Positions 18,730 to 59,155 of a stretch of 64,000 bases of DNA are shown here, one piece after another. The notes beneath the pieces are model-generated. The model was not told where the DNA came from. It searched no databases and worked only from the letters and a program-made list of their open reading frames with translations. Origin of the DNA: Macrostomum hystrix (Eukaryota > Animalia > Platyhelminthes). The stretch covers positions 2,790,001 through 2,854,000 of the forward strand of contig CATNEN010000025.1 in assembly GCA_950097015.1 (NCBI GenBank), written 5' to 3'. Both the position numbers and the translations under genes were made by a program. Numbering within the stretch: the first letter of the stretch is position 1; each line of letters begins with the position of its first letter.

Positions 18730-20615
18730 TTTTCAGCAATTAGGGATTTTCAGCAACTCGGGATTTTCAGCAATTAGGGATTTTCAGCAAATAGGGATTT
18801 TCAGCAACAAGGAATTTTCAGCAATTAGGGATTTTCAGCAACTAGAGATTTTCAGCAATCCGGGATTTTCAGCAACTAGAGATTTTCAGCTATCCGGGAT
18901 TTTCAGCAACTAGAGATTTTCAGCAATCCGGGATTTTCAGCAACTAGGGATTTTCAGCAATCCGGGATTTTCAGAAACTAGGGATTTTCAGCAATCCGGG
19001 ATTTTCAGCAACTAGGGATTTTCAGCAACAAGGAATTTTCAGCAACTCGGGATTTTCAGCAACTCGGGATTTTAGCAATTATGGATTTTCAGCAAATAGG
19101 GATTTTCAGCAACAAGGAATTTTCAGCAATTAGGTATTTTCAGCAACTAGGGATTTTAAGTAACTCGGGATTTTCAGCAATTAGGGATTTCCAACAATTA
19201 GAGATTTTCAGCAACAATGAATTTTCAGCAATCCGGGATTTTCAGCAACTAGGGATTTTCAGCAATCCGGGATTTTCAGCAACTAGGGATTTTAAGTAAC
19301 TCGGGATTTTCAGCAATTAGGGATTTCCAACAATTATAGATTTTCAGCAACAAGGAATTTTCAGCAATCCGGGATTTTCAGCAACTAGGGATTTTCAGCA
19401 ATCCGGGATTTTCAGAAACTAGGGATTTTCAGCAATCCAGGATTTTCAGCAACTAGAGATTTTCAGCAATTAGGGATTTTCAGCAACTCGGGATTTTCAG
19501 CAATTAGGGATTTTCAGCAAATAGGGATTTTCAGCAACAAGGAATTTTCAGCAATTAGGGATTTTCAGCAACTAGAGATTTTCAGCAATCCGGGATTTTC
19601 AGCAACTAGAGATTTTCAGCTATCCGGGATTTTCAGCAACTAGAGATTTTCAGCAATCCGGGATTTTCAGCAACTAGGGATTTTCAGCAATCCGGGATTT
19701 TCAGAAACTAGGGATTTTCAGCAATCCGGGATTTTCAGAAACTAGGGATTTTCAGCAATCCGGGATTTTCAGCAACTAGGGATTTTCAGCAAATAGGGAT
19801 TTTCAGCAACTAGGGATTTTAAGTAACTCGGGATTTTCAGCAATTAGGGATTTCCAACAATTATAGATTTTCAGCAACAAGGAATTTTCAGCAATCCGGG
19901 ATTTTCAGCAACTAGGGATTTTCAGCAATCCGGGATTTTCAGAAACTAGGGATTTTCAGCAATCCGGGATTTTCAGCAACTAGGGATTTTCAGCAATCCG
20001 GGATTTTCAGCAACTAGGGATTTTCAGCAACTAGGGATTTTCAGCAACTAGGGATTTTCAGCAACTAGAGATTTTCAGAAACTAGGAATTTTCAGAAACT
20101 AGAGATTTTCAGCAATCCGGGATTTTCAGCAACTAGGGATTTTCAGAAACTAGAGATTTTCAGCAATCCGGGATTTTCAGAAACTAGGGATTTTCAGAAA
20201 CTAGGGATTTTCAGCAACTAGAGATTTTCAGAAACTAGGGATTTTCAGAAACTAGGGATTTTCAGCAATCCGGGATTTTCAGCAACTAGGGATTTTCAGA
20301 AACTAGAGATTTTCAGTAATCCGGGATTTTCAGAAACTAGGGATTTTCAGCAATCCGGGATTTTCAGCAACTAGGGATTTTCAGCAACTAGGGATTTTCA
20401 GCAACTAGAGATTTTCAGAAACTAAGGATTTTCAGAAACTAGAGATTTTCAGAAACTAAGGATTTTCAGAAACTAGAGATTTTCAGAAACTAGAGATTTT
20501 CAGCAACTAGGGATTTTCAGAAACTAGAGATTTTCAGCAACTAGGGATTTTCAGCAACTAGAGATTTTCAGCAACTAGGGATTTTCAGTTACTCGGGATT
20601 TTCAGCAACTAGGGA
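18730..20615. repeat. 17 bp minisatellite (GGGATTTTCAGCAACTA), ~110 copies
   Basis: Direct tandem copies between the acyl-CoA synthetase and RdRP genes. Confidence 0.96.
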
Positions 20616-21419
20616 TCTTAACCAATTATTCATCTACATAAGATTTTAGCAATGAGGGATTTAGGCAAATAAATACTTATTTGAAAAATTGCATTTTTTA
20701 TTTCGATAAATTGGGATTTTGTTACTTAGTGTATTTTAAAGCTGGGACTGGGATGTAGTGCAGCATAGTGCAGGGTTACATGGAAAGCTTTGTCTTCAAT
20801 TATATACCTTAAGGTATAAGATGCACTTTAAAATTTTAAGCGGAAAAAAAACTGAAAAAATGTTTACAAGAAAGGGTTAGCTTGGCTGCATTAAAAATGC
20901 TAAAACTCTTAAAACAGAGGGGCGCTTAAAAATAGATATTTTTAATCTAAAACAGTTAATAAAAAATTATTGGAGTTGTCACTGAATAAAACAGACAAAA
21001 ACAAAAACATTATGAATAATCGTGCACAAAACGGTAAAACTTTGGCAAACAGACAAATCACCAGCTAATTACAGTGACCTTGTTACTGTGCTCGTTGTCT
21101 GCCGAAATACCGATTCTGTCATTACGAGGTGCATTCAAAAAGTTCTTTTCGGTGCTCAGCAAAAATTAACAAAAAACGTATGGAACTTCATCAAGCTCCG
21201 AACGTCTTGCTTTGAAAAAGATTCTGCCATGGCCAAGAAATAGAAGGGTAGCTTAAAAAATTGCTTGTAGCTCAGACACAGTCACCAGCTAAGGCTTAAA
21301 AACTCAGGAAGGTTTAGGCCATAAACTTAACTTGCAGCATTCGAAAAAATTTTGATCTGTGTGTCATTTACAAAACAATGCCAAAGGACCGAAAAGAACT
21401 TTTTGAATGCACCTCGTAG

Positions 21420-24400
21420 CTAGAATTGTCCACCAGCTTGTCCACCGCCTCTAGGGACATTGTGTCCACCAGCTTGTCCGCCGCCTCTAGGGACATTGTG
21501 TCCACCAGCTTGTCCGCCGCCTCTAGGGACATTGTGTCCACCAGCTTGTCCGCCGCCTCTAGGGACATTGTGTCCACCGTCTTGTCCACCGCCTCTAGGG
21601 ACATTGTGTCCACCAGCTTGTCCGCCGCCTCTAGGGACATTGTGTCCACCAGCTTGTCCGCCGCCTCTAGGGACATTGTGTCCACCAGCTTGTCCGCCGC
21701 CTCTAGGGACATTGTGTCCACCAGCTTGTCCGCCGCCTCTAGGGACATTGTGTCCACCAGCTTGTCCGCCGCCTCTAGGGACATTGTGTCCACCAGCTTT
21801 TCCACCGCCTCTAGGGACATTGTGTCCACCAGCTTGTCCACCGCCTCTAGGGACATTGTGTCCACCAGCTTGTCCACCGCCACTAGGGACATTGTGTCCA
21901 CCGTCTTGTCCACCTCCACTAGGGACATTGTGTCCACCGTCTTGTCCACTGTCTGTAGGGACATTGTGTCCACCGCATTGTCCGCCACCTCTAGGGACAT
22001 TGTGTCCTCTGTATTGTCCACTGCCTCTAGGGACGTTGTGTCCTCTGTATTGTCTGCCGCCCCTAGGGGCATTTTGTCCACCAGCTTGTCCACCGCCTCT
22101 AGAGACATTGAGTCCATCGTATTGTCCACCATCTCTGCCAGGCTGTCTGCTATGCCGATTCTGTTCTCGTGCTTGAAATTTTCTACGAAGTCCGCCGCTT
22201 TCACGCTGTGAGGCGTTGCCATAGCAACCGCTACTACGCAGAGTTGATCCTTGGCATAACCCACTGCCCTCAGTCAGCAGCGGAATTTGACTGTCAGGAA
22301 CCTCGTTAGCCTGGGCCAGCCAATCCCGCCAAATCTCAGACCCGCCAGTCAGCACTTCCCGGTCGCCAATGACAACAAGACGCTGTCGGGCTCTAGTCAG
22401 CATTACGGCTAGCTGATTGGGCAGCGCCGAGACGACTGCAGCATCAGCGGCATCAATAACAATGGACTGAGCTTCGCAGCCACGAAATTCTTCGATAGTG
22501 ACAACTTCAACGCAGTCAAATTGAGCCTCGCGAAGCCGCAACTGCAGCATTTGAGCTCGCTTTGGACATAGCATCAAGACAACAGCCAGTTCAGACTGCT
22601 GTCCACCTACCAGACAGGACAGGATTCGTACCAGTAGCTTGAAATAAAAATGGTTATCTTCGACTGCGACGCAAAGTTGTTTGCAGTTGACGAAACAAAC
22701 AGTTGGCAGGATGGCAAGGCTTCCAGCAATTGGTACAGCGACTCGGTCGGATAGTTGCGTCATCGTTTCTCGAAAAAAATGTTGATTAGGAAATCGCGCC
22801 AGTTCCCGCCGCATTCGATGCTGAACAGTCAACTGGAGTAGTCGAGGACCTGGTGCGTCTCGAAGACTATCGCCAAGCCGACGGATCAAGGAGTCGCTGG
22901 CTGAATACTGCGGATCTCCTAGGAGAACGAGGCGTTGAGAACAGTGCGCCAGAGCGCACAGAGTCACATACTCCGGGATGTTCCCCGTGTCGTCGATCAG
23001 TACGAGAGGAAACGAAAGTCCACTAGCGTCCAGTGCGTCGCTGCCAGACAGAACAACATCCGCCGATTCAAGGAGCCTCCGGCTCAGCCGATCTTCATCA
23101 ACGCCGCGTTCACTAGATTTTTCTTTGAATTCTTCGTCTTCAAGTTGACATCGGCAAAGCTGGGCGTCGAGTGTCAAATCGTCGACGTCTGCGGCGGCCG
23201 GGCGGCGGCGTCCGGCAAGGCGAAGCAGCAGAAGATGCGGAGCCGCCAGCCGCAGCCGACGGGTGAGGCTGTCCAGAGCTGCCTGGGAATCGACACAGAC
23301 GAGAATCGGCAGCAGCGATGGCTGGGCAGATGCCGCACGGACAATGCTGATGACCAGGCTTGACTTTCCCGTGCCCGGAGGTCCGTGGATTAGCGTTAGT
23401 CCAGGCGCTGGCGAGTCGCTAAGGACGGCTGTCTGAGCGGCACGCTGTTGAGCGTCCAAGAACTGCTCGTTTGCATCCGCATCGAACGATGAAGCAGAGC
23501 TGATTTTCTCCTACAATGTTTTTAATTTGTAATTTTTCAAATAAAAAAATCTGTTTTCTTTTTCCATCGGGTTTACAAGCGGAGGGAAAGCAAATTGGCC
23601 TCTCGCACCAAGGTCCCTGAGCTCGATTCCACGGCGATGCCTGGGCCGTAGTGAGAGTGTACACTGCCTGAGGATGAGAAAGTCAGGGCAGATCATGTAC
23701 ACATATGCGTGAGAGTGTGAGAGTGTGCATATATAAGAGAAAAATATATGCACAAAAAGATAAATGGCAATGACACCCAATAACCCATTTGGGCCAGATG
23801 TACTGGACTGGAAGCAAACAAAGACTTATTTCTAATAAGCCCTAAAGAAAACTCACCTTGGCTAGTTCGCCTGCTTGCGTCAGCCACTGGGTCACGTGAC
23901 CGGTGCCAGGATAACGACCTAGCGGGCTGTCTTTCTGATGGCCCTCCGGATCAGCCAGCAGATTCAGCGTCTGCTTCAGCTGGCTGTCGCCTTCGCCGTC
24001 CTCGGCTACGGCGAGGCATCGCCTTAGTGCATCGCACACTCGCCTGTAGGCCTCGACGCGGCCCGGACGCCAGCTGATGCGCCAGCTGATGCTCCGACTG
24101 TGGAAACAATTCGGCAACGTCGAGTCGACGGCTAAGCCGCGCGAATTCAAAACCCGAAGGTGAACGGCGAATCGGTTGTCCAGTCGACGACAGGCGACAA
24201 CCTGAGCCAGGAAGCCGGGAGCCGTCGACTGCAGAGTCGACATGGACACAGTCTGGCCAGATCGCGGACAGTTGAAGTCCTGCGACAACGATGCCGACTC
24301 GCACGACAACCAAAACTCGGATGCAGACGACGATGCTCTTTCATCGGCATCTCCTAGATCTTCGACGTCGCCACTGCCATCAACAATGGACAAGTCCAAG

Positions 24401-27400
24401 CAGAAGCCGGAGATGCTGACTGTCGGATAAGAACTTTTATTACGCAGAAATTCTTCGCAAGCTAACAAGCTGGCGACGCGAAGATAGCGATGGATCGGCG
24501 AATCAGTAGCCGCAGTCTCGCCCATGCCATCAATCGTCGAAGTAGCCACATCATCGCCAAGGGTGATAACGAATTCGAAATCGCGCATTAGCGGCCGCAG
24601 TTGCTGCTCGAAAAATCGTTTAGCATCACTGGCGCCGTCGCTTTCGCCGTCGCCGTCACTTTCGACTTCGCCGTCGCCGTCGCCTTCGCCATGAATGGAG
24701 CCCAACAGAATCCAGCAGTGCCAGGCGCCAGCGGCATTTAACAGTTCAACGGTGCTAGTTGACGTCGGAAAAGCCGACGGAGATGACAAATTTAATAGGC
24801 GCCGAGCGGTCCCTGCTTCGAGTCCCAGACGTCGCAGGGAGGTCAGGAGTTCGAGTCGAATAAGCGGCTGGCTGGAGACGATCGTTTCATTCACGAGGGT
24901 CAAGGCGTCTGCAATGTCAGCCAAGACGGATGCTGGCAGCGTTCTTGGCATCGAGAGCAGCAGCAGACGATCCAGCAGAGCTAGCAGGCGCTCTGTCAGT
25001 TCTGCCTTCACTGATGATGAATCATTTTCTGCCAATTGGCGCAGAACGGCGACAAAAAATCTCGGCGAAGCTACGTCGATAGCCTGATCGAGGCACTGCA
25101 GCGTCGGCTCCGGGCTTAGCATTTGCGACGAAGTCACAAGCATCGGATCCACGAATTCGCCGATTTCGTCAATAGTTGGCTGATCATTGCAGTCTTCGGA
25201 AACCTTAAGAATGAAAAGACAGTGCGTGATCTGATTTGTACTTTTATTTGCACAGTAGGCTAGCGGTCTTGGCGCAGCGCTTTACCTGAGCCAATTCTCA
25301 ATAGTGACTACTCGCTCTACCGAGAAGTGGCTCAGGCGCCAGCACCAGACCCTCTGGAGCGGCTACGACAATTACAGGCAAGCCCGATCCGCGATGCCTG
25401 GAATTAACCGGAAAGTCTCTCAAGAGAACTGACCTCAGGGAGATGTCCATCATAGGTAGTAGTAAGCCAGTAGTAAGTAATTACCTGGGGCACTTCTTCT
25501 GTCCATTTGTTGACGTCCACCACGTCGAGATAGCCGACTCCGGCAGCCTGGGCGCGGCCGGTCGAAGGCTGCAGCACAAACAGTTCCGCTTCGATGAGCG
25601 GCACTTTGCGAACCCGCGTCGATCGACTACGGCGCCGATCTCCGGGCAGATCGAATCTTTGAAGATCAACGCTGACAGAAATTAACTGAAAGGCGTCGGC
25701 AATGTCGCTGTCCTTCAGCCAGACGAATGTTCCGCGATGGCTTCCTCGATACAGCTGCAGCGAGCGCTCCGAGAGGTCCAGGCTGTAGTCCTGGCCGAGG
25801 CGATGCTGACGGCGGCAGTTGAGCTGGCCGGAGAACAGGTAGGCACGGACACTGTCCGGTGGTAGGGGCGCAGCCGTGCACAGACTGAATGGGCGAAGGA
25901 ACAGCAGCGCCAGGCAGAGCTGATCGGGCAGCCGCAGAACTAGGAGGCTGAGTGGCGATGGATGAAGGGAAAAATATTGCGCAACTTTCAAGGGTTAAAA
26001 AAATATAATCAGAATCCCAATCCATGTAGATCCAAATCCAACAGATCCCAATCCAATCAGATCCCAATCCATGTAGATCCCAATCCAATCAGATCCCAAT
26101 CCAATCAAATCCCAATCTAAACAGATTCAAAATATCCGAAAAATATAACAATCCGACCAAATCCCATCAACACACATCCCACTTTTGCCAGATCCCAAAT
26201 TCGAATCAGAATCCAATTCGAATAGCATCCCAATTCAATCCGATCCCAACGCAACGCACCATCTCGGGTGCCTGGCCAGAGCTCTCAGCAGGTGAGCCCA
26301 ATCAAAGCTGGCCTGGTCGAAGCGAAAGTACAGCTGCCAGCGGCAGTCGACCCCGGCTAGGCCGAAGGCGGTCCGGTCGTCCGACCGTATCAGCAGGCGC
26401 GACTTGTTCAAAGCATTGAGAACCAGCGGAGCGGGCAGGCCGATCTCGCGAATGGCCACTCGCTTCTGGTCGAGGCTGAAGCGGCCGAAATCTACGAAGT
26501 CCGCGTAATTGTGGCGCAGCATGATCCTGGCGTCTGGGGTAGCAGATAATGAAGTGGCTGCTCAGATTCGGAAAACGGCTAAAACTGCTGATAAACCCGT
26601 GTGATGGTCACTGAGAATTTTGCAGGCGTAGCTTGCAAAGCAGATGAATAGGGGAAGGGAAGAAGTCTAAACTTGCCAGTGCGGGGCAGAGGGAAGAGGA
26701 GGACAGGCGAAGAGGACAGGGTAAGAGGACAGGGTAAGAGGACATGGGAAGAGGACAGGGTAAGAGGACATGGGAAGAGGACAGGGTAAGAGGACAGGGT
26801 AAGAGGACATGGGAAGAGGACAGGGTAAGAGGACATGGGAAGAGGACAGGGTAAGAGGACATGGGAAGAGGACAGGGTAAGAGGACAGGGTAAGAGGACA
26901 TGGGAAGAGGACAGGGTAAGAGGACAGAATAAGAGGACAGGGTAAGAGGACAGGGTAAGAGGACAGCGTAGGAGGATAGGCGAAGAGGACAGGGTAAGAG
27001 GACAGGGTAAGAGGACAGGCGAAGAGGACAGGGTAAGAGGACAGGGTAAGAGGACAGGGTAAGAGGAGCGAGGAAAGCAAGCTCCGAGGGAAAGGCAGGG
27101 GAGAAGGGAATGGGGGTCGGTCAGGGAAAGTTAGGTATTGGAGGTCCTATTGGCCTCAGGCTAGGCAGCCCCACTCGTCCCATAGGCCACGAACAGAATC
27201 GTTGTGCCTACTGCCATAGTAGCCTACTGCCGTGAGTAGCGCAATGCGCATTAAACTCCTAGCTTTGGTAGCAGTTGTCGAGAAGTTCTAGGCTATATAT
27301 ATCTAGTCAGAGAAATGCGGAAAGCCTATAGGCAAAGCGGAAAGGATCTAAGGTAGTGCCTAGAGATGATTTCGCGACCTAGGGAGATTGTATAACTTAA

Positions 27401-30400
27401 AAAAAAATTGGCTGGCTGAAATACACAGCTAAAATAAAAATAAAGGTCGGTGACCACCGACGTTGGAGACGACGCAGGTACATTCGGGTGACATGCTGAT
27501 AAATTTTGAAGGCCTGGCAAGGCCGCACTGGGGCGCAGTGCTAATTCGTGTATAGGGGTGTGAAATACACTTGTGCTTATGGGATATCTCGACTGTCTGA
27601 AGGGTCTGAAGCGATTTGATTCTTGCTTCAGTAGATGCGCAAAAATATAGGTATTTAGGATCACAATCTATAGGACTTGGGTATTTAACATAATCATCTA
27701 TTGTACTTCAGATGAACGGAAAATGGGATTTGGGATAGAAAGTGATGGGATGGCACCCACCCTCCAGCGAGTCGCAGCGAGACCGGCAGAAATCCCAGAC
27801 GAACTGAAATTTGCTGAACTCGCCAAGGCGACCGAAATCTTCTCGACAGCTCAGCAGCTCGGCGACAAACTCGGACCTCACCGACTCCACCGTCAGCATC
27901 GAATTGTTGGCCGCTCCGTCTTGTGACTTCCCTGCTGACGATCTCCGGATGGCTTGGTAGGCCAGAGACCTGTATGGCAACAACAGAACAGGTGACTCGA
28001 AATAATTTAAGCGAATTTTAAGTATCAGGGGACAAGGAACACTGATTAATCTGAGGAACTGGATTACTGAATCCTCAAAAGATTATCCCGGATTACTGAA
28101 GCTACACATGAGGACTTGGGATTATTTTAGATTTACCTGAGGATGTGGGATTATTGTAGATTTACATGAGGATGTGGGATTATTGAAGATTTACCTGAGG
28201 ATGTGGGATTATTGTAGATTTACATGAGCATGTGGGATTATTTTAGATTTACCTGAGGATGTGGGATTATTGTAGATTTACCTGAGGATGTGGGATTATT
28301 GTAGATTTACCTGAGGATGTGGGATTATTGTAGACTTACCTGAGGATGTGGGATTATTGTAGACTTACCTGAGGATGTGGGATTATTGTAGACTTACCTG
28401 AGGATGTGGGATTATTGAATATTTACCTGAGGATGTGGGATTATTTTAGATTTACATGAGGATGTTGGATTAGTGTAGCTTAAACTAAAGATTTGGGATT
28501 ATAGTAGATTTACCTGAGGATTTAAGAGCATTGTAGCTACACTTTTTTATCTGGAAAGGTATGTTTTAACTCACCTTCGAATTTCGCGACCATTGAGCAC
28601 CATTTTTTGCCAGACAAATTTGTCAGCGCATTGTTTTGCTTCGGATTGCCCCTTCAGCAGCTCTTTTTCCAAGGCTATCAGTTTATCAGACGGAATTGCT
28701 TCGCCCGACTTTGCGGCATCAATTGCCCGCGAGAACATACACCCGAGCTGTCGGCACTGTTCAGCCTCCGGTCCGAGCAGATCTGCCCAGTCCCTGTACA
28801 GCCTGTCAATGTCTGATATGATTCTCTGATTAGCATTCTGAGCTGCAAAATAGCTCAACAAATCCAGCCTAGCTAGCTGATCGCTTCTGATTGATTTTGT
28901 TGAATTGATTGCTGCTGGATAGTCGTAGGGTTTTACCTGCTGTTTGGGTACGAGATCTGAAAGCAGCGGAGCGGAAATGTTTGCCTAGATACCAGAAAAC
29001 TAAATACCGATCCTCATATATACACCCTACAGTCTCACGGGGATCCAAATCTACCTTCCTCAATAAGATCACAATCTACCTTCCTCAATAAGATCCCAAA
29101 TCTACCTTCTTTAATAAGATCCCAATCTACCTTCCTCAATAAGATCCCAATATACCTTCCTCAAAAAGATCCCAATATACCTTCCTCAATAAGATCCCAA
29201 TCTAACTTTCCTAATAAGATCCCAATCTACCTTCCTCAATAAGATCCCAATCTAACTTTCCTAATAAGATCCCAATCCACCTTCCTCAATAAGATCCCAA
29301 TCTAACTTTACTAATAAGATCCCAATCTACCTTCCTCAATACGATCCTAATCTACCTTCCTCAATACGATCACAATCTACATTCTCACTTGGAACCCAAT
29401 CTAAATTCTCACCTGGATCCCAATCTAAATTCTCACTTGGATCCCAATCTACATTCTCACCTGGATCCCAATCTACATTCTCACCTGGATCCCAATCTAA
29501 ATTTTCACTTGGATCCCAATCTACATTCTCACCTGGATCCCAATCTAAATTTTCACTTGGATCCCAATCTACATTCTCACCTGGATCCCAATCTAAATTC
29601 TCACTTGGATCCCAATCTACATTCTCACCTGGATCCCAATCTAAATTCTCACTTGGATCCCAATCTACATTCTCACCTGGATCCCAATCTACATTCTCAC
29701 TTGGATCCCAATCTACATTCTCACCTGGATCCCAATATACATTCTCACCTGGATCCCAATATACATTCTCACCTGGATCCCAATCTACATTCTCACCTGG
29801 ATCCCAATCTACATTCTCACCTGGATCCCAGCACACAAAGTACTGATCCCCATCCAGATCGGAGCCGGCAATTTCCCCCGGATGCGGTCGCGGCCCAGTG
29901 ACAGGAAACACTATGCAATCAACCAGGTGAGACAGATTAGCTAATCCCGGATTATCCTCGTCTGTGACAGCGCGCAGCACTCGAACATCGCCGAGCAGAT
30001 AGCAGGGATTTTTCGACACCAATACTCGGCCGCGCAGGCTTACGTAGCGGCCTCTGTCGACAGTGATTCGCAGCTCGCAGCCCATCGCTGCCAGGAACTC
30101 TTCGTCGACGTCGTCGCCACTGCCAAAGGCACCATGGCAGATGCGACGCGCCAGCTCTGGACTAACGCCGCCGCAGCCGTCGGTAAAACAGTGGCGCCTA
30201 TTACTGTCATAAATGTCGTCGGCCTTGAGTAGCCATTCTGGCTCGACAGTCACACGAGTTAGTCGGACAGCGCTGAACAATAGGCCGGTTCGAGACAGAC
30301 GCTTTGAAGCACTGCTTATCTTCTAGAGAGGCGAAAATGGACAGTGAATCACTTAATGCGACTGAGAACTGAGAAGTGACTCACAGTGATTGCATACGAG

Positions 30401-33058
30401 AGTGAGTCATTTAAATTTGATCAGTGAGTGACACAATGCCGGTTGGATCAGAAATTAAATCACCGTGACTAGATCTGAGAGTGATTCAAATTTAACAGCC
30501 CAATTTATGATGACTTAAACCAGGCATCTATGAATCCATTCCAACCTGGAATTCACCCAATTTGGCCAGCGCCGCCTCGACCTCATCGGCGGTGCCGCGC
30601 CACAGGTAGCACTTGCGCTGCTTCAAACCGCCGGAGCTGCAGCCGAGAAAAGCCACCGACTGGCCGGCAACCATGAGCTGGCGTTTGTCGCCGCCTAGCA
30701 GCATAGCTCGAACACTGGATTCTGGCACTTTAGCGTCGAACTGCATCACCAGGAGCTTGTCGGCGCCTTCAGCAGCAATAAATCGATTCTCTTCGGCGCC
30801 CTGCTGACCAATCAGCTGCCAGGATTGGCCAGCGTTGTGCTCCGAGATTGTCAGCGCCGGCAAACGCAGTCGGCGATGCCGCCCGAATCGTCCGGGTTGT
30901 AAAAGCAACGCTTGTTCCGTTTCCTGCGAATAATTTATGGGGTTACTAGATTAATAGGTAGTAATTAGAATAGGAATTATTGTATACACAGATTTTACCT
31001 GCACGCAGGCACACACTCACACAGGGTGTGTACATCTGCCCGTGTCCGTCTCATCGTCAGGCAGTGTACACTCTCACTGTGCCTTGGAGGTTGGCCCTCA
31101 AGGGCGTTAAATTGCACCACATGCTCCCCAAGCATTTTCTCCGCGGCTGCACACTCATATAAAATTTTTCAATAAATGTCCTAATAAGTGTCAGTGTAAG
31201 TTAAGTATTAATGTACAGCTGTTCAGTCCATGGACTAGGGGGACACCGCCGACTAAATTTAAACCCTGATGCTGGTACCCAATTTATATTTGGGGAGACT
31301 TAAGCACTGTGGGAAATAATTTGCTTTAGGTGTTCTGTAAGAAAGGTCAGCAGTTCGAACCTTCAGTAAGACACTTAATTATCTGGTACTGCAGATCACC
31401 CAGATGTAAAATGGGTACGAGCATCAGCTAATGTGGCGGCCACCCCAGTCCATGGACTGAGCAGTTGTACACAGCGTTTGGAAACGCAGCGCAATAGTTG
31501 CGGCTGTGGCATTGGCTGTAAATCAGAGCCAATTAGAGGGGCTAGTGAGAGTGAGTAGGTTGTATATATAAGACAAAAATATATGATTTATCACCTGAGG
31601 CGGATCCACATAGAATGCCAAGTTGACAATGTCACTCAATGTTGATTCTGAATTTTTACATTTTCTCTGCTTTCCTTTGCTGTCGGCGTAGTGGTTCAAT
31701 GTGGAAGTCGGCAATGGAAATTCGCCGTCAATCGCGCGCCGCAATGACCTGCGATATAATTTATGAAGGCAATGTGAAAACATGCGCACCGGACATTGAG
31801 GAAGATGACAGATGGATTGATATAGCTGAAGGGGTAGAATTGGCGCTGACACTACAGGCTGGGGGTAGAATTGGCGCTGACACTACAGGCTGGGGGTAGA
31901 ATTGGCGCTGACACTACAGGTCGGGGGGTAGAATTGGCGCTGACACTACAGGCTGGGGGTAGAATTGGCGCTGGCACTACAGGTCGGGGGGGTAGAATTG
32001 GCGCTGACACTACAGGTCGGGGGGTAGAATTGGCGCTGACACTACAGGTCGGGGGGTAGAATTGGCGCTGACACTACAGGCTGGGGGTAGAATTGGCGCT
32101 GACACTACAGGTCGGGGGGGTAGAATTGGCGCTGACACTACAGGTCGGGGGGTAGAATTGGCGCTGACACTACAGGCCGGGGGGTAGAATTGGCACTGAC
32201 AGTACAGGTCGTGGGTAGAATTGGCACTGACAGTACAGGTCGGGGGTAGAATTGGCACTGACAGTACAGGTCGGGGGTAGAATTGGCGCTGACATTGGGC
32301 TGTGAACAGCTTTTCAGTCCATGGACTGGGGAGACGCCACAGCCAGCCCCAATTATTTATTACCCCAGTTAATGCTGGTGCCCATTTACATATGTAAGAG
32401 CTGGGTGAACTGAAGAAATGCAGAGTTAAGTGTCTTGCTAAAGGACCCAAAATGCTCGAATGGAGTCGGGAATCGAACCCCCGACTTTCAAGTCGCTAGT
32501 CGCTAGATCTAACAACTAGGCTACAGCCTTCTACGAGGTAGGGGTGGGGTCAAGAACTCACTCAACAGCAGCGGCCAGCCCGCTGTCCGTCAGTTCGTCC
32601 ACAGTCAGCGTCATGTACGGCACATTAAACTGGCGACATGCCAGGTGGAATCTATCGCCGTAATTAGCATCAGCCTGGGCGTCTGTGGATGGGGAGAATG
32701 GGGAGAAAATCAGGACTACTAGAGAGGAGCGATAGAGTGTGACACTCTCGACTAGGCTGGGACAGTCCCCAGCCAAGGCCGCCGAGAGCCGCCTCTTGAA
32801 GCTGTAATCATCGAGACCAGCCAGGTGCAGCAGCAGCAGGTCGATAGCCGAGTGCAGGCTGGCAAAGTCTGGTACCAGATTGTCCTCTTGTCGGCGAATA
32901 TCGGCTAAAGTCGACTGGAAATCAATTGGCGACGAAGTTGGCGAGGGTCGACTAATGACTCGCCGACGACAGCGACGAAAAATGTCTGCCTCGCGAAAGG
33001 CGGTCAGCAGAGTCCGCTGCTGCTGATCTAATCGTCGGCCGCAGACGATGAGACGCAT
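21420..33058 (-). CDS. RNA-dependent RNA polymerase fused to a C-terminal Upf1/DNA2-NAM7-type SF1 helicase and an RGG-repeat tail; 10 exons, ~2106 aa
   Basis: Exons 33058-32562, 31748-31595, 30923-30546, 30322-29821, 28956-28575, 27969-27761, 26557-26260, 25947-25485, 25203-23857 and 23510-21420; all GT-AG, phases 2,0,0,1,2,1,2,0,0 match; 6321 nt open. RdRP motifs: [73 protein letters not shown]. Helicase motifs: [24 protein letters not shown]. Start codon uncertain; the fusion rests on predicted splicing. Confidence 0.82.
21425..22110 (-). repeat. 39 bp coding repeat giving ~17 copies of [13 protein letters not shown] at the C-terminus of the RdRP-helicase
   Basis: In frame with the helicase in ORF 21420..23459; ends at the stop codon. 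Confidence 0.85.
22300..23460 (-). other. SF1B (Upf1/Hrr1/ZNFX1/senataxin-like) helicase domain
   Basis: Ordered motifs [54 protein letters not shown]. Confidence 0.88.
23597..23725 (+). mobile_element. SINE family 1, internally deleted copy
   Basis: GCCTCTCGCACCAAGGTCCCTGAGCTCGATTCC head joined to AGTGAGAGTGTACACTGCCTGA..AAAGTCAGGGCAGAT. Confidence 0.8.
26690..27065. repeat. 13 bp intronic minisatellite (GAGGACAGGGTAA/GAGGACATGGGAA)
   Basis: Direct tandem copies. Confidence 0.93.
28105..28525. repeat. 29 bp intronic minisatellite (GATGTGGGATTATTGTAGATTTACCTGAG)
   Basis: Direct tandem copies. Confidence 0.93.
29040..29383. repeat. 25 bp intronic minisatellite (AAGATCCCAATCTACCTTCCTCAAT), related to the adjacent 24-mer
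   Basis: Direct tandem copies sharing GATCCCAATCTA with the neighbouring array. Confidence 0.9.
29384..29830 (-). repeat. 24 bp repeat spanning the RdRP exon-4 donor (TGGGATCCAG|GTGAGAATGTAGAT), 19 donor copies
   Basis: First unit overlaps the exon end at 29821; donor copies at 24-bp intervals down to 29388. Confidence 0.93.
31000..31150 (-). mobile_element. SINE family 1 fragment
   Basis: GTGTGTACATCTGCCC..CAGGCAGTGTACACTCTCACTGTGCCTTGGAGGTTGGCCCT matches 53401-53733. Confidence 0.8.
31212..31310 (-). mobile_element. SINE family 2, 3' fragment
   Basis: Reverse complement reads TGGGTACCAGCATCAG...AGTCCATGGACTGAACAGCTGTACA. Confidence 0.7.
31345..31480 (+). mobile_element. SINE family 2 copy
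   Basis: AGTTCGAACC B-box remnant, AAGACACTTAA, CACCCAGATGTAAAATGGGTAC, CCCCAGTCCATGGACTG. Confidence 0.75.
31830..32290. repeat. ~31-32 bp intronic minisatellite (GGGGTAGAATTGGCGCTGACACTACAGGTC)
   Basis: Direct tandem copies. Confidence 0.93.
32291..32528 (-). mobile_element. SINE family 2, near full length
   Basis: tRNA-like head GGCTGTAGCCTAGTTG...GGGGGTTCGATTCCCGACTCCA, followed by AAGACACTTAACTCTGCATTTCTTCAGTTCACCCAGC and CAGTCCATGGACTG. Confidence 0.8.
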
Positions 33059-33429
33059 TTGGTTAGAGCCGGCTGCAACGGTTTTTTCAAGATCAGCAAC
33101 CGGACTCGGACAGTCGATCAAGAAAAATCGAATCAATTTATCGATCCATATTTTAATCTCTAATCGAAAAATTTTCGAGTAGGGCCTAACTAAATCTCTA
33201 TTTATAGCAAAATCGATCCGCAAAAAAACTAATATAATTATTGATCGATCGATCAATAAAAAATCATTCGTCAAGTTACTTTCGAATCTCAAAGTAGACT
33301 ATCAAATTATCGATCGATTTTCTTTATTACCAATCAAAATATCGATTGCTTTTTTAATTCACCCATCAAATTATCGATCGGCTTTAAAAATCATTTTTCT
33401 ATTTAAATCGATCAATTTTTTAAACCATC

Positions 33430-34100
33430 AATCAACTTATAAATAGATTATCGAAATCACCAATCAACTTATAAATAGATTATCGAAATCACCAAGCAAG
33501 TTATAAATATATTATCGAAATCACCAAGCAAGTTATAAATAGATTATGGAAATCAACAATCAACTTATAAATAGTTTCTCGAAATCAACAATCAACTTAT
33601 AAATAGATTATGGAAATCACCAATCAATTTATAAATAGATTATGGAAATCACCAATCAATTTATAAATAGATTATGGAAATCACCAATCAACTTATAAAT
33701 AGATTATGGAAATCACCAATCAACTTATAAATAGATTATGGAAATCAACAATCAACTTATAAATAGTTTCTCGAAATCAACAATCAACTTATAAATAGAT
33801 TATGGAAATCACCAATCAATTTATAAATAGATTATGGAAATCACCAATCAATTTATAAATAGATTATGGAAATCACCAATCAACTTATAAATAGATTATG
33901 GAAATCACCAATCAACTTATAAATAGATTATGGAAATCACCAATCAATTTATAAATAGATTCTCGAAATCACCAATCAATTTATAAATAGATTCTCGAAA
34001 TCACCAATCAAGTTACTGATAGATTTTCAAAATCACTTATCAAGTTACTGATAGATTTTCAAAATCACCAATCAAGTTACTGATAGATTTTCAAAATCAC
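33430..34100. repeat. 32 bp AT-rich minisatellite (CAATCAACTTATAAATAGATTATGGAAATCAC)
   Basis: Direct tandem copies upstream of the RdRP gene. Confidence 0.93.
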
Positions 34101-34959
34101 AATCTACGAGTAATTATCAATCAAATTTTCAAATCACTAATTGATCAATCGATCGATTTTCAAAACCACTAATCAAAAGAATCAAACAATTATAGATTCT
34201 CGAGTAACTCAACAAATGGTTCATCGATTATAGATTAGCAAAATATAAAATCTAAATATAACCGATGTAATCGAGAACTAAAATGCTGAAATACAGCGTT
34301 CTTAAAATAGAAATCTAGTTCAAGCCTACCATTAAATATTGTGTAAATTGTTAGAAACGCAAAGTTCATTGATAGATTAAAAGAGGAACAAGTTTCTTAT
34401 AAATATAATTGTTAGACCTCAATCGGACCTAAATGTAGGTAGATATACTCGTTTTAAGTTGTGTTGTGATATTATAATTTTAACATCTGTATCCCTTTTA
34501 AATACTCTACAATAAAAACAGTAAGATCAAACAAATAATAATTTAAATACAGGGCAATTTCGCTTCAATTAATATAGCTTGCCAATGTCTATTTAGTACA
34601 CTAGAATTAACGCACTCTTAAAGTAGAGCGTCAATTAAAAGGTACAGGTGTGTTTGCGCCAATGATTAAAACGGTAAATAATTTGCGTCAAACCCAACGC
34701 CTCTAGACAAAAACTAGCAGAGAAAAAAACAAAAACAAATAATTTCAGAACAAAACAAGTGGAAGTGCAACCAAGATAAACCGATAGCGTTCTCTGTGGC
34801 AAGTGCAACCTAAGAATCTAACAAAAGGTAACAAGCATCAGCAGAATTAATAGTGCATGATTACTGGAATGCATATGTAAACTTACTTAGGAAAACTGAC
34901 ACCACTATATTTCCGTCTGATAAGTTAACTACTTCAGCAAAGCGATGGAAAAATAATAG

Positions 34960-35445
34960 GGCTGTGGGATTTGAAGGGTTTAGGAGTGAGATATTGCTGT
35001 GGGATTTGAAGGGTTTGGGAGTGAGATGTTGCTGTGGGATTTGAAGGGTTTGGGAGTGAGATGTTGCTGTGGGATTTGAAGGGTTTGGGAGTGAGATGTT
35101 GCTGTGGGATTTGAAGGGTTTAGGAGTGAGATGTTGCTGTGGGATTTGAAGGGCTTAGCAGTGAGATATTGCTGTGGGATTTGAAGGGTTTAGCAGTAAG
35201 ATGTTGCTGTGGGATTTGAAGGGTTTAGCAGTAAGATGTTGCTGTGGGATTTGAAGGGTTTAGGAGTGAGATGTTGCTGTGGGATTTGAAGGGCTTAGCA
35301 GTGAGATGTTGCTGTGGGATTTGAAGGGTTTAGCAGTAAGATGTTGCTGTGGGATTTGAAGGGTTTAGGAGTGAGATGTTGCTGTGGGATTTGAAGGGTT
35401 TGGCAGTGAGATGTTGCTGTGGGATTTGAAGGGCTTGGCAGTGAG
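34960..35445. repeat. 35 bp minisatellite (GTGAGATGTTGCTGTGGGATTTGAAGGGTTTAGGA), left block
   Basis: Direct tandem copies. Confidence 0.93.
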
Positions 35446-53400: not shown

Positions 53401-53733
53401 GGTTGCAGGAGGGCTGTGCGCAATGGCACATCATTTGGTGACAGTAGACACGCAGCCAGCAAGGAGCCGATTGTGCCCGTTCCGCTGACTCCTGAGCACA
53501 CACAAGAACACTCACACAGGTGTGTACATCTGCCCTGACTTTTTCCTTGTCAGGCAGTGTGCACTCTCACTGTGCCTTGGAGGTTGGCCCTGAAGGGCGT
53601 AAATTGCACGACAAGCCCCCAAGCCTTCTCTCCGCGACTGGCATCACAAATGAATTTGGCCTCACCACGGAATCGAGCTCAGGGACCTTGGTGCGAGAGG
53701 CAAACGCGTTAGACCGCTCTGCCACCGACCCCG
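53401..53733 (-). mobile_element. SINE family 1, full-length tRNA-derived copy
   Basis: Head GGGGTCGGTGGCAGAGCGGTCTAACGCG...GAGCTCGATTCC with A-box and B-box-like motifs, followed by a ~250-bp body found five more times in the window. Confidence 0.85.
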
Positions 53734-57400: not shown

Positions 57401-58201
57401 GAAAGTGTACACTGCATGACAATGAGAAAGTCAGGGCAGATGTACACACCTGTACAGACCGAAATGGGCAGAATTGCCTCCTCGCTGGCTGCGGGTCTAG
57501 TGTCACCAAATGATGTGCCATTGCCCGCAGCCCTCCAACAATTATTTTCTTATTATATATTCCGTGGGTTCTTCTTTCGTTTCCATAGCAACTAGACAAG
57601 AATGTTGACAAAATTTATTAGATCTTTTTGATTATCCTTGAAGGTGACGAGCCTGGCCCAGAAGCTGCTGGAACGTTTCAACCAGCTGGACGAAATCGTC
57701 ACTGGCGATGGTCGCTGGCTTCCGTTGTACAGCCAGACGCCGATCTGGTGGTTCCGGACAGAGTATCGCATGCGCCTCGGCTGCGCCACCGGCGAGCTGC
57801 TGCGCCTGGTCTGCTTCGCCGCCTATCCGTGCCGCAACTACTGGGTGGCCTATATCTGCACCTTCCGCTGCCGGCTCATCTGGCGGCCAACAACGGCGGC
57901 GCCGCAGTCCGCCGGAGCCGCCGATGTCGACAACTCCGTGGACATCAAGCGACAGTTGCGCCTCCTCTGCGGCAGAGCCGGCGGCATGCTGCTGCTGGCC
58001 TGCGGCCTCATGTCGCTGTGGCAGTCGGCAGCCGGTGGTGCCGGCACTGTCTTTCACTGCGCCGGGTCTCTGCTGGAGTTTCAGGAGGCCATTGACAACG
58101 AGAATAGCCGATTGAACAGCTCCGGTGTCTATGTGAGAATGCCTCTGAAATTTATGTTTCGAAATAGTCAGCAACTAACTCAACCATGCCAAGCCGAATG
58201 A
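54493..58201 (+). CDS. Class A (rhodopsin-like, peptide-receptor type) GPCR-like gene; exons 54493-54756 and 57644-58201 (or a donor at 58133)
   Basis: TM1-TM2 pattern GGFNVLGIGIAVAVY..RRRCYPTYSLMLLLLCALDLL; CAG|GTGAGA donor and TTGAAG|GTG acceptor in phase 0; TM3-like YWVAYICTFRCRLIWRP; TM4-like segment. TM5-7 not found. Confidence 0.6.
54726..55728 (+). repeat. 43 bp repeat spanning the GPCR exon-1 donor (31 nt exon + 12 nt intron), 23 full copies
   Basis: Unit GCTGCTGTGCGCTCTGGATCTGTTGCACCAG|GTGAGAGTCTGA; 54726-55714 = 23 x 43 bp. Confidence 0.96.
55890..56390. repeat. 16 bp CT-rich intronic minisatellite (CTCATCTCTCCCGTGT)
   Basis: Direct tandem copies. Confidence 0.94.
57380..57540 (+). 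mobile_element. SINE family 1, 3' fragment
   Basis: GGCCAACCTCCAAGG..AAAGTCAGGGCAGATGTACACACCTG..GTCACCAAATGATGTGCCATTG. Confidence 0.8.
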
Positions 58202-58919: not shown

Positions 58920-59155
58920 GCATCAAGGTCAAGAGCTCGATTCCGCCGTGAGGCCAATTAGAGAAGGCTTGAGGGCTTGTCGTGCAATTTACGCCCTTGA
59001 GGGCCAACCTCCAAGGCACAGTGAGAGTGTACACTTCCTGAAGATGAGAAATTCAGGGCATATGTACACACCTGTGTGAGTGTGTGCTCAGGATTCAGCG
59101 GGAATGGCAGAATTGCCCCCTAGCTGGCTACGTGTCTGCTGTCACCAAATGACGT
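58920..59155 (+). mobile_element. SINE family 1 copy
   Basis: GAGCTCGATTCC...GGGCTTGTCGTGCAATTTACGCCCTT...CTGTCACCAAATGA. Confidence 0.82.

What the first reader, a model, noticed from the sequence alone, without database searches (positions are those of the whole stretch)
21420..33058. Single-gene fusion of an RdRP with a Upf1/Hrr1/ZNFX1-type helicase and an RGG tail
Seen: ten GT-AG exons join with matching phases into one 6321-nt ORF carrying an RdRP core (SDLDGD), ~800 aa of unassigned sequence, an SF1B helicase and a Gly/Arg repeat tail. Established: RdRPs work with separately encoded Upf1-like helicases (S. pombe Rdp1-Hrr1 in RDRC, C. elegans EGO-1 with ZNFX-1, Arabidopsis RDR6 with SDE3), and RdRPs are patchily retained in animals. 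Inference: this may be a one-polypeptide small-RNA amplification module. I cannot tell whether this architecture has been described before.
Basis: partly seen in the sequence, partly recalled or inferred. Interest (0 to 1): 0.85.

Follow-up and report, generated by a model that had tools for sequence, protein, structure and literature searches.

The report
Degenerate RdRP–helicase fusion gene, flatworm
This animal gene really does encode one long protein joining an RNA-copying enzyme to an RNA helicase, but that design is an old, widespread and little-studied family, and this copy has lost key catalytic parts, so it is unlikely to copy RNA as a canonical polymerase.

Summary
The fusion is real. 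Spliced contigs from four runs of one study confirm five minus-strand GT-AG introns that link the last RdRP exons, the middle exons and the helicase exon. A nine-exon model gives an open 6,165-nt ORF of 2,054 aa.

The architecture is not new. The closest helicase relatives are 1.7-2.4 kaa proteins with RdRP (PF05183) plus AAA_11/AAA_12, found in bivalves, a sea anemone, a diatom, Chromera and fungi. Two papers record it: amphioxus BL02069 and Fusarium Fgrdrp5. A family profile matches the window protein colinearly (E 4.5e-223).

This copy is degenerate. 173 profile positions holding the first catalytic barrel (DPBB1) and neck helices are missing. The N-terminal P-loop is lost. Helicase motif II is DD, not DE, and only 47 of 87 conserved helicase columns survive, a pattern shared with a Macrostomum lignano protein. 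The DLDGD loop and Walker A are intact.

The family's "unassigned" middle folds as a TLDc-like domain, a helical repeat and a Upf1-type barrel. A 59-nt repeat-derived exon gives a helicase-less isoform.

The scan earlier noted a different RdRP fusion elsewhere in this genome.

The parts
32562..33058 (-). Exon 1 (ATG at 33058-33056). It is a remnant of the family's N-terminal P-loop NTPase (AAA_28-like) domain. The Walker A GxxxxGK[TS] is replaced by [10 protein letters not shown].
   Evidence: Alignment with family N-termini. hhalign to the family N-terminal profile is weak: E 3.4e-4, probability 38%. No Pfam hit. The splice to exon 2 was not tested with reads.
30546..30945 (-). Exon 2, the start of the RdRP region ([19 protein letters not shown] block). 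An alternative acceptor at 30923 would require an extra upstream exon.
   Evidence: tblastn with family proteins hits 30884-30546. Splice candidates. Colinearity. Junctions not tested with reads.
29821..30322 (-). Exon 3, the end of the slab, then the DPBB1/neck deletion junction (about 30079-30107), then DPBB2 with the Asp triad DLDGD at 29860-29846.
   Evidence: Pfam RdRP 2.2e-36. The family HMM aligns positions 78-375 and 549-1877 but skips 376-548. The QIRYxGxKGV block is absent. Of 38 conserved columns in the deleted block, 37 are missing. No match to the missing block anywhere in the window.
29042..29830 (-). The 5' part of intron 3, a 24/48-nt minisatellite. Each unit repeats the last exon bases plus the GTGAGA donor.
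   Evidence: TRF. There are many equally scoring in-phase donors. Homology picks the first one, at 29821.
28575..28956 (-). Exon 4, RdRP after the Asp triad (bridge-helix region, [11 protein letters not shown] block).
   Evidence: Pfam RdRP profile positions 484-539. The contig joint 28573/28575 to 27967/27969 is present in all four runs.
27761..27969 (-). Exon 5, the C-terminal part of the RdRP region.
   Evidence: Joints on both sides are seen in the contigs. 52% identity to M. lignano A0A1I8IQ63 across exons 3b-5.
26260..26533 (-). Exon 6, a conserved family segment after the Pfam RdRP domain.
   Evidence: Joints 26533/27761 and 25947/26260. tblastn to family residues about 834-923.
25485..25947 (-). 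Exon 7, the TLDc-like beta domain of the family.
   Evidence: hhalign to the family central profile gives E 1.4e-27, probability 99.8%. The family model matches TLDc domains of NCOA7, mEAK7 and TBC1D24 at Z 10-11, rmsd 2.5-2.7 A over about 120 residues.
23857..25203 (-). Exon 8, a helical repeat region plus the beta barrel and stalk that precede the helicase core (Upf1-type 1B).
   Evidence: hhalign to the family central profile gives E 3.7e-10, probability 96.7%. The family model's residues 391-553 match IGHMBP2 residues 3-159 at Z 10.4. Joints on both sides are seen in the contigs.
23609..23667 (-). An alternative 59-nt cassette exon inside a dispersed repeat. Including it shifts the frame and stops translation before Walker A, giving a helicase-less or NMD-prone isoform.
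   Evidence: Joints 23509/23608 (run X4) and 23666/23856 (run X3), compared with the direct joint in X1 and X2. AG and GT sites and the premature stop. Repeat copies elsewhere in the window.
22221..23510 (-). Exon 9, first part: the Upf1-like SF1B helicase core. Walker A GPPGTGKS lies at 23384-23361. Motif II reads LIDD (DD at 22994-22989) instead of DE.
   Evidence: Pfam AAA_11 and AAA_12. AF2 model with pLDDT 82, matching SETX (Z 30.9), Upf1 (Z 29.9, rmsd 3.1 A over 383 residues) and IGHMBP2 (Z 27.1). Motif comparison.
21420..22220 (-). Exon 9, second part: a Gly/Arg-rich tail with about 20 copies of [12 protein letters not shown] (36-nt repeat at 21427-22130), followed by the stop codon.
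   Evidence: TRF and composition. Contig X1 record 1 extends about 1,380 nt below 23300, that is, into the repeat.

Best explanation
The locus is one expressed gene of nine or ten exons on the minus strand. It encodes a protein of about 2,054 residues. The protein is a fast-evolving flatworm member of an ancient eukaryotic family. That family joins, in one chain, a P-loop NTPase (AAA_28-like), a cellular two-barrel RdRP, a TLDc-like beta domain, a helical repeat, a Upf1-like SF1B helicase and often a basic tail. In intact members the likely logic is that the helicase loads or clears RNA templates for the polymerase on the same chain, much as separate RdRP and helicase partners do in RDRC-type complexes. 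That logic is inferred, except that the Fusarium member contributes to exonic siRNA accumulation. In this copy three catalytic modules are eroded. The N-terminal P-loop is gone. The DPBB1 barrel and neck helices of the polymerase are deleted. The helicase has DD for DE in motif II plus changes in motifs III, V and VI. The copy keeps the Asp-triad barrel, Walker A, the Upf1 fold and the middle domains, and it has gained a 20-repeat RGG tail. It therefore most likely does not synthesise RNA as a canonical two-barrel polymerase. Instead it probably acts as an ATP- and RNA-binding scaffold or clamp, with the RGG tail adding RNA binding or condensate targeting. A repeat-derived poison exon sets how much full-length protein is made relative to a helicase-less form. 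Shown here: the gene structure from exon 4 to exon 9, expression, family membership and the motif and domain losses. Inferred: loss of catalysis, and the scaffold and condensate role.
For: Five introns and a chain of exons from the RdRP to the helicase are seen in spliced contigs of four runs. The 6,165-nt ORF is open. The top helicase relatives are fused proteins of 1.7-2.4 kaa, and five of five scanned carry RdRP plus AAA_11/AAA_12. Named members come from molluscs, a cnidarian, a diatom, Chromera and fungi. The family HMM aligns colinearly, with scores of 729 and 191 bits, and skips positions 376-548. The conserved DPBB1 motifs are absent. That block maps between the slab and DPBB2 of plant RDRs, whose domain order is slab-DPBB1-neck-DPBB2 (PMC8713982). 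The helicase motif changes are shared with M. lignano A0A1I8FRJ5. The Upf1-like fold is kept. The middle domains are kept. Differences between RNA contigs and the genome are 6 synonymous to 3 non-synonymous. The window protein has the longest branch in the family tree. The poison exon is shown.
Against: Outside the deletion the RdRP keeps 87 of 92 family-conserved columns, including DLDGD. A long-dead polymerase would not be expected to do this. The deletion may therefore be recent, allelic or an assembly fault, and it was not checked against reads. An E-to-D change in motif II may reduce ATPase activity rather than abolish it. No assay, localisation or small-RNA data exist for this gene. The runs are not recorded as RNA; that they are RNA is inferred from the spliced contigs and the empty introns. 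No single contig spans the whole transcript.
Confidence: 0.65

Rival explanations
1. One reading: the protein is a working one-chain small-RNA amplification module, in which the polymerase copies target RNA and the fused helicase feeds or releases templates.
For: The Asp-triad loop and 87 of 92 conserved RdRP columns outside the deletion are kept. Walker A and the Upf1 fold are kept. The Fusarium family member Fgrdrp5 contributes to ex-siRNA accumulation (PMC11237814). The ORF is intact and expressed.
Against: The DPBB1 barrel and neck are absent. A single DPBB1 substitution in Arabidopsis RDR6 already disrupts silencing (PMC8713982). Helicase motifs II, III, V and VI are altered. Amphioxus, which has a family member, shows no secondary siRNAs (PMC6396948).
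Confidence: 0.1
2. The DPBB1 loss is not the normal state of the gene. It is an assembly fault or a rare in-frame deletion allele in the sequenced individual, and the usual protein has a complete RdRP joined to a divergent helicase.
For: The flanking RdRP sequence is almost perfectly conserved, which fits a polymerase that was working until recently.
Against: The junction keeps the frame and carries 11 residues that cannot be aligned, rather than a clean join. No trace of the missing block is found elsewhere in the 64-kb window. The rest of the protein is independently eroded, in the P-loop and the helicase.
Confidence: 0.15
3. The gene is a transcribed relic on its way to becoming a pseudogene and has no function.
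For: Hallmark elements are lost in three enzymatic modules, the branch is the longest in the family, and there is a frame-shifting alternative exon.
Against: All 2,054 codons are open across nine correctly spliced exons. Differences between contigs and genome are 6 synonymous to 3 non-synonymous. The remaining RdRP and middle domains are strongly conserved. The altered helicase motifs are shared with M. lignano, so they have been maintained for a long time.
Confidence: 0.07
4. Two neighbouring genes, an RdRP and a helicase, have been wrongly merged into one model.
For: No single contig spans the whole transcript, and one isoform stops before the helicase.
Against: Spliced joints link every exon from 28956 to 23300 in overlapping contigs. 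The reading frame is continuous. About 80 relatives carry the same fusion in one protein.
Confidence: 0.02

Closest known systems
Fusarium graminearum Fgrdrp5, with the related fungal proteins found here (Aspergillus wentii, Trichoderma ceciliae, Podospora, Phanerochaete)
   Same: One chain carries PF05183 RdRP followed, about 700 residues later, by a DEXDc/AAA_11 plus AAA_12 (PF13087) helicase (PMC11237814; fungal members). The window protein is colinear with the family profile built from these and the animal members.
   Different: The fungal members lack the N-terminal AAA_28 domain and the basic tail. They have an intact DPBB1 and DE motif II. Fgrdrp5 has knockout phenotypes and an effect on ex-siRNA. 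Nothing is known for the flatworm copy.
Animal members: amphioxus BL02069 (RdRP + AAA_12) and bivalve or cnidarian 'uncharacterized proteins' such as Mya arenaria XP_052769817
   Same: The order of modules is the same: AAA_28-like, RdRP, middle region, Upf1-like helicase, often with a basic tail. The DPBB2 region is up to 65% identical.
   Different: Those proteins keep the P-loop, DPBB1, DEAxQ and the other helicase motifs. The window copy has lost them and has a regular 12-residue RGG repeat tail. In amphioxus no secondary siRNAs were detected (PMC6396948).
RdRP with separately encoded Upf1-like helicase partners (S. pombe Rdp1-Hrr1 in RDRC, Arabidopsis RDR6 with SDE3, C. elegans RdRPs with ZNFX-1)
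   Same: The pairing is the same: a PF05183 polymerase with an SF1B Upf1-like helicase. SDE3, HELZ2 and ZNFX1 appear as weaker helicase relatives of the family.
   Different: In those systems the two activities sit on separate proteins. Here they are fused, and in this copy both look catalytically eroded. The partner relationships themselves are from general knowledge and were not tested here.
Dictyostelium and oomycete RdRPs with an N-terminal Dicer-type SF2 helicase, and the RLR-helicase/RdRP/nucleotidyltransferase fusion noted elsewhere in this genome (s1-408095)
   Same: These are also single-chain helicase-RdRP fusions.
   Different: Their helicase belongs to a different superfamily (SF2) and lies N-terminal to the polymerase. 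They form a separate family. This is from general knowledge and an unchecked scan note.

Membership tests
Cellular two-barrel RdRP (Pfam PF05183) | Pfam RdRP match above the gathering score | tested here: met
   126.2 bits against a cutoff of 23.8 for the exon-3 ORF. Exon 4 scores 15.2 bits on its own.
Cellular two-barrel RdRP (Pfam PF05183) | Asp-triad loop DbDGD in DPBB2 | tested here: met
   [18 protein letters not shown] matches the family consensus. Of the conserved columns from DPBB2 to the domain end, 57 of 61 are kept.
Cellular two-barrel RdRP (Pfam PF05183) | First barrel DPBB1 (QIRYxGxKGV block) and neck helices between the slab and DPBB2 | tested here: not met
   Family HMM positions 376-548 have no counterpart. 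Of 38 conserved columns there, 37 are absent. No tblastn match elsewhere in the window. Not verified in reads.
Cellular two-barrel RdRP (Pfam PF05183) | RNA-templated RNA synthesis | not testable with these tools
   This needs a biochemical assay.
Upf1-like SF1B helicases | AAA_11 and AAA_12 matches, and a two-RecA fold like Upf1, IGHMBP2 or SETX | tested here: met
   67.1 and 48.8 bits against a cutoff of 27. AF2 model at pLDDT 82 matches SETX (Z 30.9), Upf1 (Z 29.9, rmsd 3.1 A over 383 residues) and IGHMBP2 (Z 27.1).
Upf1-like SF1B helicases | Walker A (motif I) GxxGxGK[TS] | tested here: met
   GPPGTGKS is present.
Upf1-like SF1B helicases | Motif II DE(A/S)xQ with the catalytic glutamate | tested here: not met
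   LIDDTGN, where 43 of 44 family members have DEA. M. lignano A0A1I8FRJ5 also has DD.
Upf1-like SF1B helicases | Motifs III, V and VI (GDxxQL, FQGRE, RxNVxxTRA) | tested here: inconclusive
   The window has GDPQYS, FRGCE and [15 protein letters not shown] and the motif V glutamate are kept. The motif III Q-L, the motif V Q and the first motif VI arginine are changed. Overall 41 of 73 columns conserved at 90% or more are kept.
Upf1-like SF1B helicases | 1B beta barrel and stalk ahead of RecA1 | tested here: met
   Exon 8 aligns to the family profile over the barrel (E 3.7e-10). The family model's barrel matches IGHMBP2 residues 3-159 at Z 10.4 and the Dna2 barrel at Z 9. The fold was predicted for a relative, not for the window sequence itself.
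RdRP-Upf1-like helicase fusion family (Fgrdrp5 / BL02069 / LOC128209691 type) | Colinear match over the RdRP, the middle region and the helicase in one protein | tested here: met
   The family HMM matches in two stretches, E 1.2e-60 and 4.5e-223, covering residues 64-1764. tblastn hits are colinear over exons 2-9.
RdRP-Upf1-like helicase fusion family (Fgrdrp5 / BL02069 / LOC128209691 type) | Both parts lie on one mRNA | tested here: met
   Overlapping spliced contigs link exon 4 (and upstream sequence) through exon 9.
RdRP-Upf1-like helicase fusion family (Fgrdrp5 / BL02069 / LOC128209691 type) | N-terminal AAA_28-type P-loop domain (animal and protist members) | tested here: not met
   The Walker A site is replaced by [10 protein letters not shown]. 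Only weak profile similarity remains in residues 62-156 (hhalign E 3.4e-4, probability 38%). No Pfam hit.
TLDc domain (PF07534) | Sequence match to Pfam TLD, or a TLDc fold | tested here: inconclusive
   None of the 63 family middle regions hits Pfam TLD. The predicted fold of a relative matches TLDc structures at Z 10-11, rmsd about 2.6 A over about 120 of 165 residues. The window's exon 7 aligns to that part of the family profile. This is a fold resemblance only.

The most novel reading that the evidence does not exclude
The one-barrel RdRP remnant is kept under selection: 87 of 92 conserved columns and an intact Asp triad, despite the loss of DPBB1. This could be because it still takes part in catalysis or its control with a DPBB1 supplied in trans by a paralogue. 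That would be a split two-barrel polymerase, like the beta and beta-prime subunits of cellular RNA polymerases. Alternatively it may act as a dominant regulator of such paralogues, tethered to RNA granules by its pseudo-helicase and RGG tail.
Probability: 0.07. Interest if true: 0.8.

Novelty: new member of a known kind. Interest (0 to 1): 0.48.

Why it matters
RdRPs are patchily kept in animals, and outside nematodes their role is unclear. This work shows that the RdRP-helicase fusion seen here is not a one-off. It belongs to an ancient five-module family present in molluscs, cnidarians, flatworms, amphioxus, diatoms, alveolates and fungi. Only one functional study exists, and the family's middle part (TLDc-like domain, helical repeat, Upf1-type barrel) appears not to have been described. 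The flatworm copy is a natural variant in which three enzymatic modules are eroded while the protein stays expressed and constrained. That makes it useful for asking which activities the family really needs. Macrostomid flatworms are amenable to RNAi, which makes such tests practical.

Tried and rejected
1. A homologue search with exon 8 (449 aa) gave no hit at E <= 0.001 among proteins of 247-786 aa, so no close relatives could be recovered for the middle region.
2. The look-up of encoding contigs had no record for the two Macrostomum lignano proteins P0214 and P0007. I therefore could not test whether the M. lignano gene also lacks DPBB1 or is fused.
3. A profile of the family middle region matched only designed helical proteins among PDB sequences. 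Pfam scans of the 63 middle regions gave nothing consistent and no TLD hit.
4. Rfam found nothing in 20000-35000, and ARAGORN found no tRNA. I read the intron-1 element at about 32440-32520 as tRNA-like. That reading is unsupported, so I call it only a dispersed repeat.
5. treekit timed out on 70 full-length proteins. I replaced it with an hmmalign plus FastTree tree. The window's placement next to diatom sequences in that tree is probably long-branch attraction, and I draw no conclusion from it.
6. I enumerated candidate tenth exons in intron 1. Exons of 178 nt (32409-32232) and 154 nt (31748-31595) keep the frame, but neither has homology support.
7. A paper search on RdRP, SF1 helicase and 'fused to' found no further description of the family.
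Full report
**Observation**

The gene lies on the minus strand. Open frames between 33058 and 21420 carry two Pfam-recognisable parts. One is a cellular RdRP (PF05183, 126 bits, with SDLDGD). The other, in a single large last exon, is AAA_11/AAA_12, the pair that marks Upf1-like SF1 helicases. That exon ends in a 36-nt unit repeated 19.6 times. The repeat encodes [12 protein letters not shown] units with 15 RGG motifs, 35% Gly and 10% Arg.

**RNA evidence**

Four runs of one study hold the locus. They are coded as organism A and their kind is not on record. Their Logan contigs, laid on 23300-29000, skip five segments exactly: 28574-27970, 27760-26534, 26259-25948, 25484-25204 and 23856-23511. 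All have GT..AG ends on the minus strand, and the introns have no depth apart from repeats. The runs therefore behave as RNA.

- Contig X1-1 (2,913 nt) joins the helicase exon to exon 8.
- X1-2 (1,458 nt) and X3-12 (1,386 nt) join sequence upstream of exon 4 through exons 4-6 into exon 7.
- X2-7, X3-11 and X4-16 join exon 7 to exon 8.

No single contig spans everything, but the overlapping chain links the RdRP exons to the helicase exon.

**Gene model**

Nine exons give a 6,165-nt ORF of 2,054 aa with no internal stop:
- 33058-32562
- 30945-30546
- 30322-29821
- 28956-28575
- 27969-27761
- 26533-26260
- 25947-25485
- 25203-23857
- 23510-21420

That exon sits in repeat and minisatellite DNA and has a weak donor. 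The nine-exon protein already aligns with relatives without a gap at that point. I treat the tenth exon as unproven.

**The fusion is a family**

I searched 1.84 billion representative proteins with the helicase core. The best hits were not lone helicases but proteins of 1.7-2.4 kaa with the match at their C-terminal end. All five that I scanned carry PF05183 at about residues 50-760 and AAA_11/AAA_12 at about 1290-1930. Three of the five also carry an N-terminal AAA_28 P-loop domain.

A search with the Mya arenaria member listed fused proteins from the following groups:
- bivalves (Mya, Dreissena, Mercenaria, Mytilus)
- a sea anemone (Actinostola)
- a diatom (Amphora)
- Chromera
- fungi (Aspergillus wentii, Trichoderma, Diplodia, Podospora, Phanerochaete)

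Most are named only 'uncharacterized protein'. Among the proteins fetched, 81 are at least 1,600 aa long and carry both a DxDGD motif and a GPxGTGK motif. Family proteins match window exons 2-9 colinearly by tblastn. A family HMM of 1,901 positions matches the window protein in two stretches, E 1.2e-60 and 4.5e-223.

**Literature**

- Pinzon et al. 2019 (PMC6396948) drew amphioxus BL02069 as RdRP plus AAA_12 with an intact active site. They found no secondary siRNAs in that animal and proposed a role unrelated to RNAi.
- Zeng et al. 2024 (PMC11237814) describe Fusarium Fgrdrp5 as RdRP plus DEXDc plus AAA (PF13087). It sits on a separate branch, has knockout defects in ascospore discharge and contributes to ex-siRNA accumulation.
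- A 2026 preprint reports multiple PF05183 proteins in Macrostomum lignano and none in planarians.
- I found no paper that treats the fused family as such.

**Which organism**

Other agents' notes call this genome a flatworm. That fits the closest named hits, which are M. lignano fragments. A0A1I8IQ63 is 52% identical to window residues 381-663. A0A1I8FRJ5 is the helicase relative that shares the window's odd motifs. The window's own protein is not in the searched libraries.

**This copy is eroded**

- *N-terminus.* Relatives have M..I.LCG...GKTT. The window has [16 protein letters not shown], so there is no Walker A. The rest of exon 1 resembles the domain only weakly (hhalign E 3.4e-4, probability 38%).
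- *RdRP.* Family HMM positions 376-548 have no counterpart. Eleven residues that cannot be aligned bridge the gap inside exon 3, near 30079-30107. The missing block holds PSVFQIRYQGxKGV, LNRQxIxLLSxLG and SRxxFGVCD.
  - Against solved plant RDRs the family aligns at E about 1e-57. The block falls between the slab and DPBB2. From the RDR2 domain order slab-DPBB1-neck-DPBB2 (PMC8713982), I infer that it covers DPBB1 and the neck helices.
  - The missing block is found nowhere else in the window.
- *Helicase.* Walker A is intact, but several motifs are changed:
  - Motif II is DDTGN where the family has DEAxQ.
  - Motif III is GDPQYS where the family has GDPxQL.
  - Motif V is FRGCE where the family has FQGRE.
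  - Motif VI has NQLAV where the family has RxNV, with TRAR kept.
  
  Of 73 columns conserved at 90% or more in 44 relatives, the window keeps 41. M. lignano A0A1I8FRJ5 keeps 38, and 23 columns differ in both, including the E-to-D change in motif II and the Q-to-R change in motif V. The fold is still clearly Upf1-like: AF2 pLDDT 82, with SETX at Z 30.9, Upf1 at Z 29.9 and IGHMBP2 at Z 27.1.

**Signs of constraint**

- Outside the deletion the RdRP keeps 30 of 31 and 57 of 61 family-conserved columns.
- The middle region keeps 28 of 35, but the helicase keeps only 47 of 87.
- Differences between the RNA contigs and the genome are 6 synonymous to 3 non-synonymous.
- The window protein has the longest root-to-tip path in a family tree, 3.86 against a median of 3.06.

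The near-perfect RdRP remnant is hard to square with an old loss of one catalytic barrel. Either the deletion is recent, allelic or an assembly fault, or the remnant still works in some way. I could not test this.

**The 'unassigned' middle**

A 63-sequence alignment of the family's middle region (A1) gave a confident model: P0001 residues 900-1512, pLDDT 83.
- Model residues 1-134 match TLDc domains (NCOA7, mEAK7, TBC1D24, OXR2) at Z 10-11, rmsd about 2.6 A over about 120 residues.
- Residues 174-415 are a helical repeat with no specific match.
- Residues 391-553 match the N-terminal stalk and 1B barrel of IGHMBP2 (Z 10.4) and the barrels of Dna2, Upf1 and Sen1.

The window keeps these parts. 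Exon 7 aligns to the TLDc-like part at E 1.4e-27, and exon 8 aligns to the helical and barrel parts at E 3.7e-10. No family member hits Pfam TLD, so this is a fold resemblance only. No paper in the searchable library links TLDc domains with cellular RdRPs.

**Tail**

Basic or Gly/Arg-rich tails recur in several animal members. P0170, for example, has 37% Gly, 22% Arg and 7 RGG motifs. Fungal and diatom members lack a tail. The regular 12-residue repeat is specific to this locus.

**Alternative isoform**

In runs X3 and X4 the contigs join exon 8 and exon 9 to a 59-nt exon at 23609-23667. Runs X1 and X2 carry the direct joint.
- The cassette has AG and GT sites.
- It lies in a dispersed repeat with at least five more partial copies in the window.
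- It shifts the frame and stops translation 37 codons into exon 9, before Walker A.

The locus therefore also makes a helicase-less or NMD-prone transcript. This does not refute the fusion, but it means that not every transcript encodes it.

**Mechanism**

For intact family members, a polymerase and a Upf1-like helicase on one chain suggest coupled template handling. This resembles the separately encoded RdRP-helicase pairs, a comparison I draw from general knowledge. The Fusarium data tie one member to siRNA accumulation, while the amphioxus data argue against classic amplification in an animal.

For this copy the losses point to a protein that binds ATP and RNA but probably neither polymerises as a two-barrel enzyme nor unwinds efficiently. 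The most likely role is a scaffold or clamp with an RGG tail. All of this is inference.

**Verdict**

- It is a new and unusually degenerate member of a known but barely studied family.

Noticed in passing
window 23609-23667 (-): A 59-nt alternative exon made from a dispersed repeat. It is present in contigs of two runs and absent in two others. It frame-shifts and stops translation before the helicase Walker A.
   Followed up: partly
window 29042-29830: Intron 3 opens with about 21 tandem 24-nt units. Each unit repeats the last seven exon bases and the GTGAGA donor, so more than 20 identical in-phase donors follow the one that homology supports.
   Followed up: partly
window 23598-23693, 27466-27561, 31010-31078; also 53508-53704, 57400-57448, 59020-59086: A dispersed repeat with very high depth in the RNA contigs (hundreds to thousands, against 5-10 for the exons). 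Many contigs end inside it.
   Followed up: partly
P0001:900-1033 and the equivalent part of about 60 relatives; window exon 7 (25485-25947): The RdRP-helicase family carries a domain with a TLDc-like predicted fold (Z about 11 to NCOA7, mEAK7 and TBC1D24). Pfam does not see it, and I found no paper mentioning it.
   Followed up: partly
window 26699-27067, 28109-28521, 31831-32294, 26007-26249: Several introns of this gene are largely minisatellites, with units of 13, 29, 31 and 16-48 nt.
   Followed up: no
P0007 (M. lignano A0A1I8FRJ5), residues about 560-996: This UniProt model joins the divergent helicase to what looks by eye like an AMP-binding (acyl-CoA synthetase-like) enzyme. I ran no domain scan on it. 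It is probably a merged gene model.
   Followed up: no
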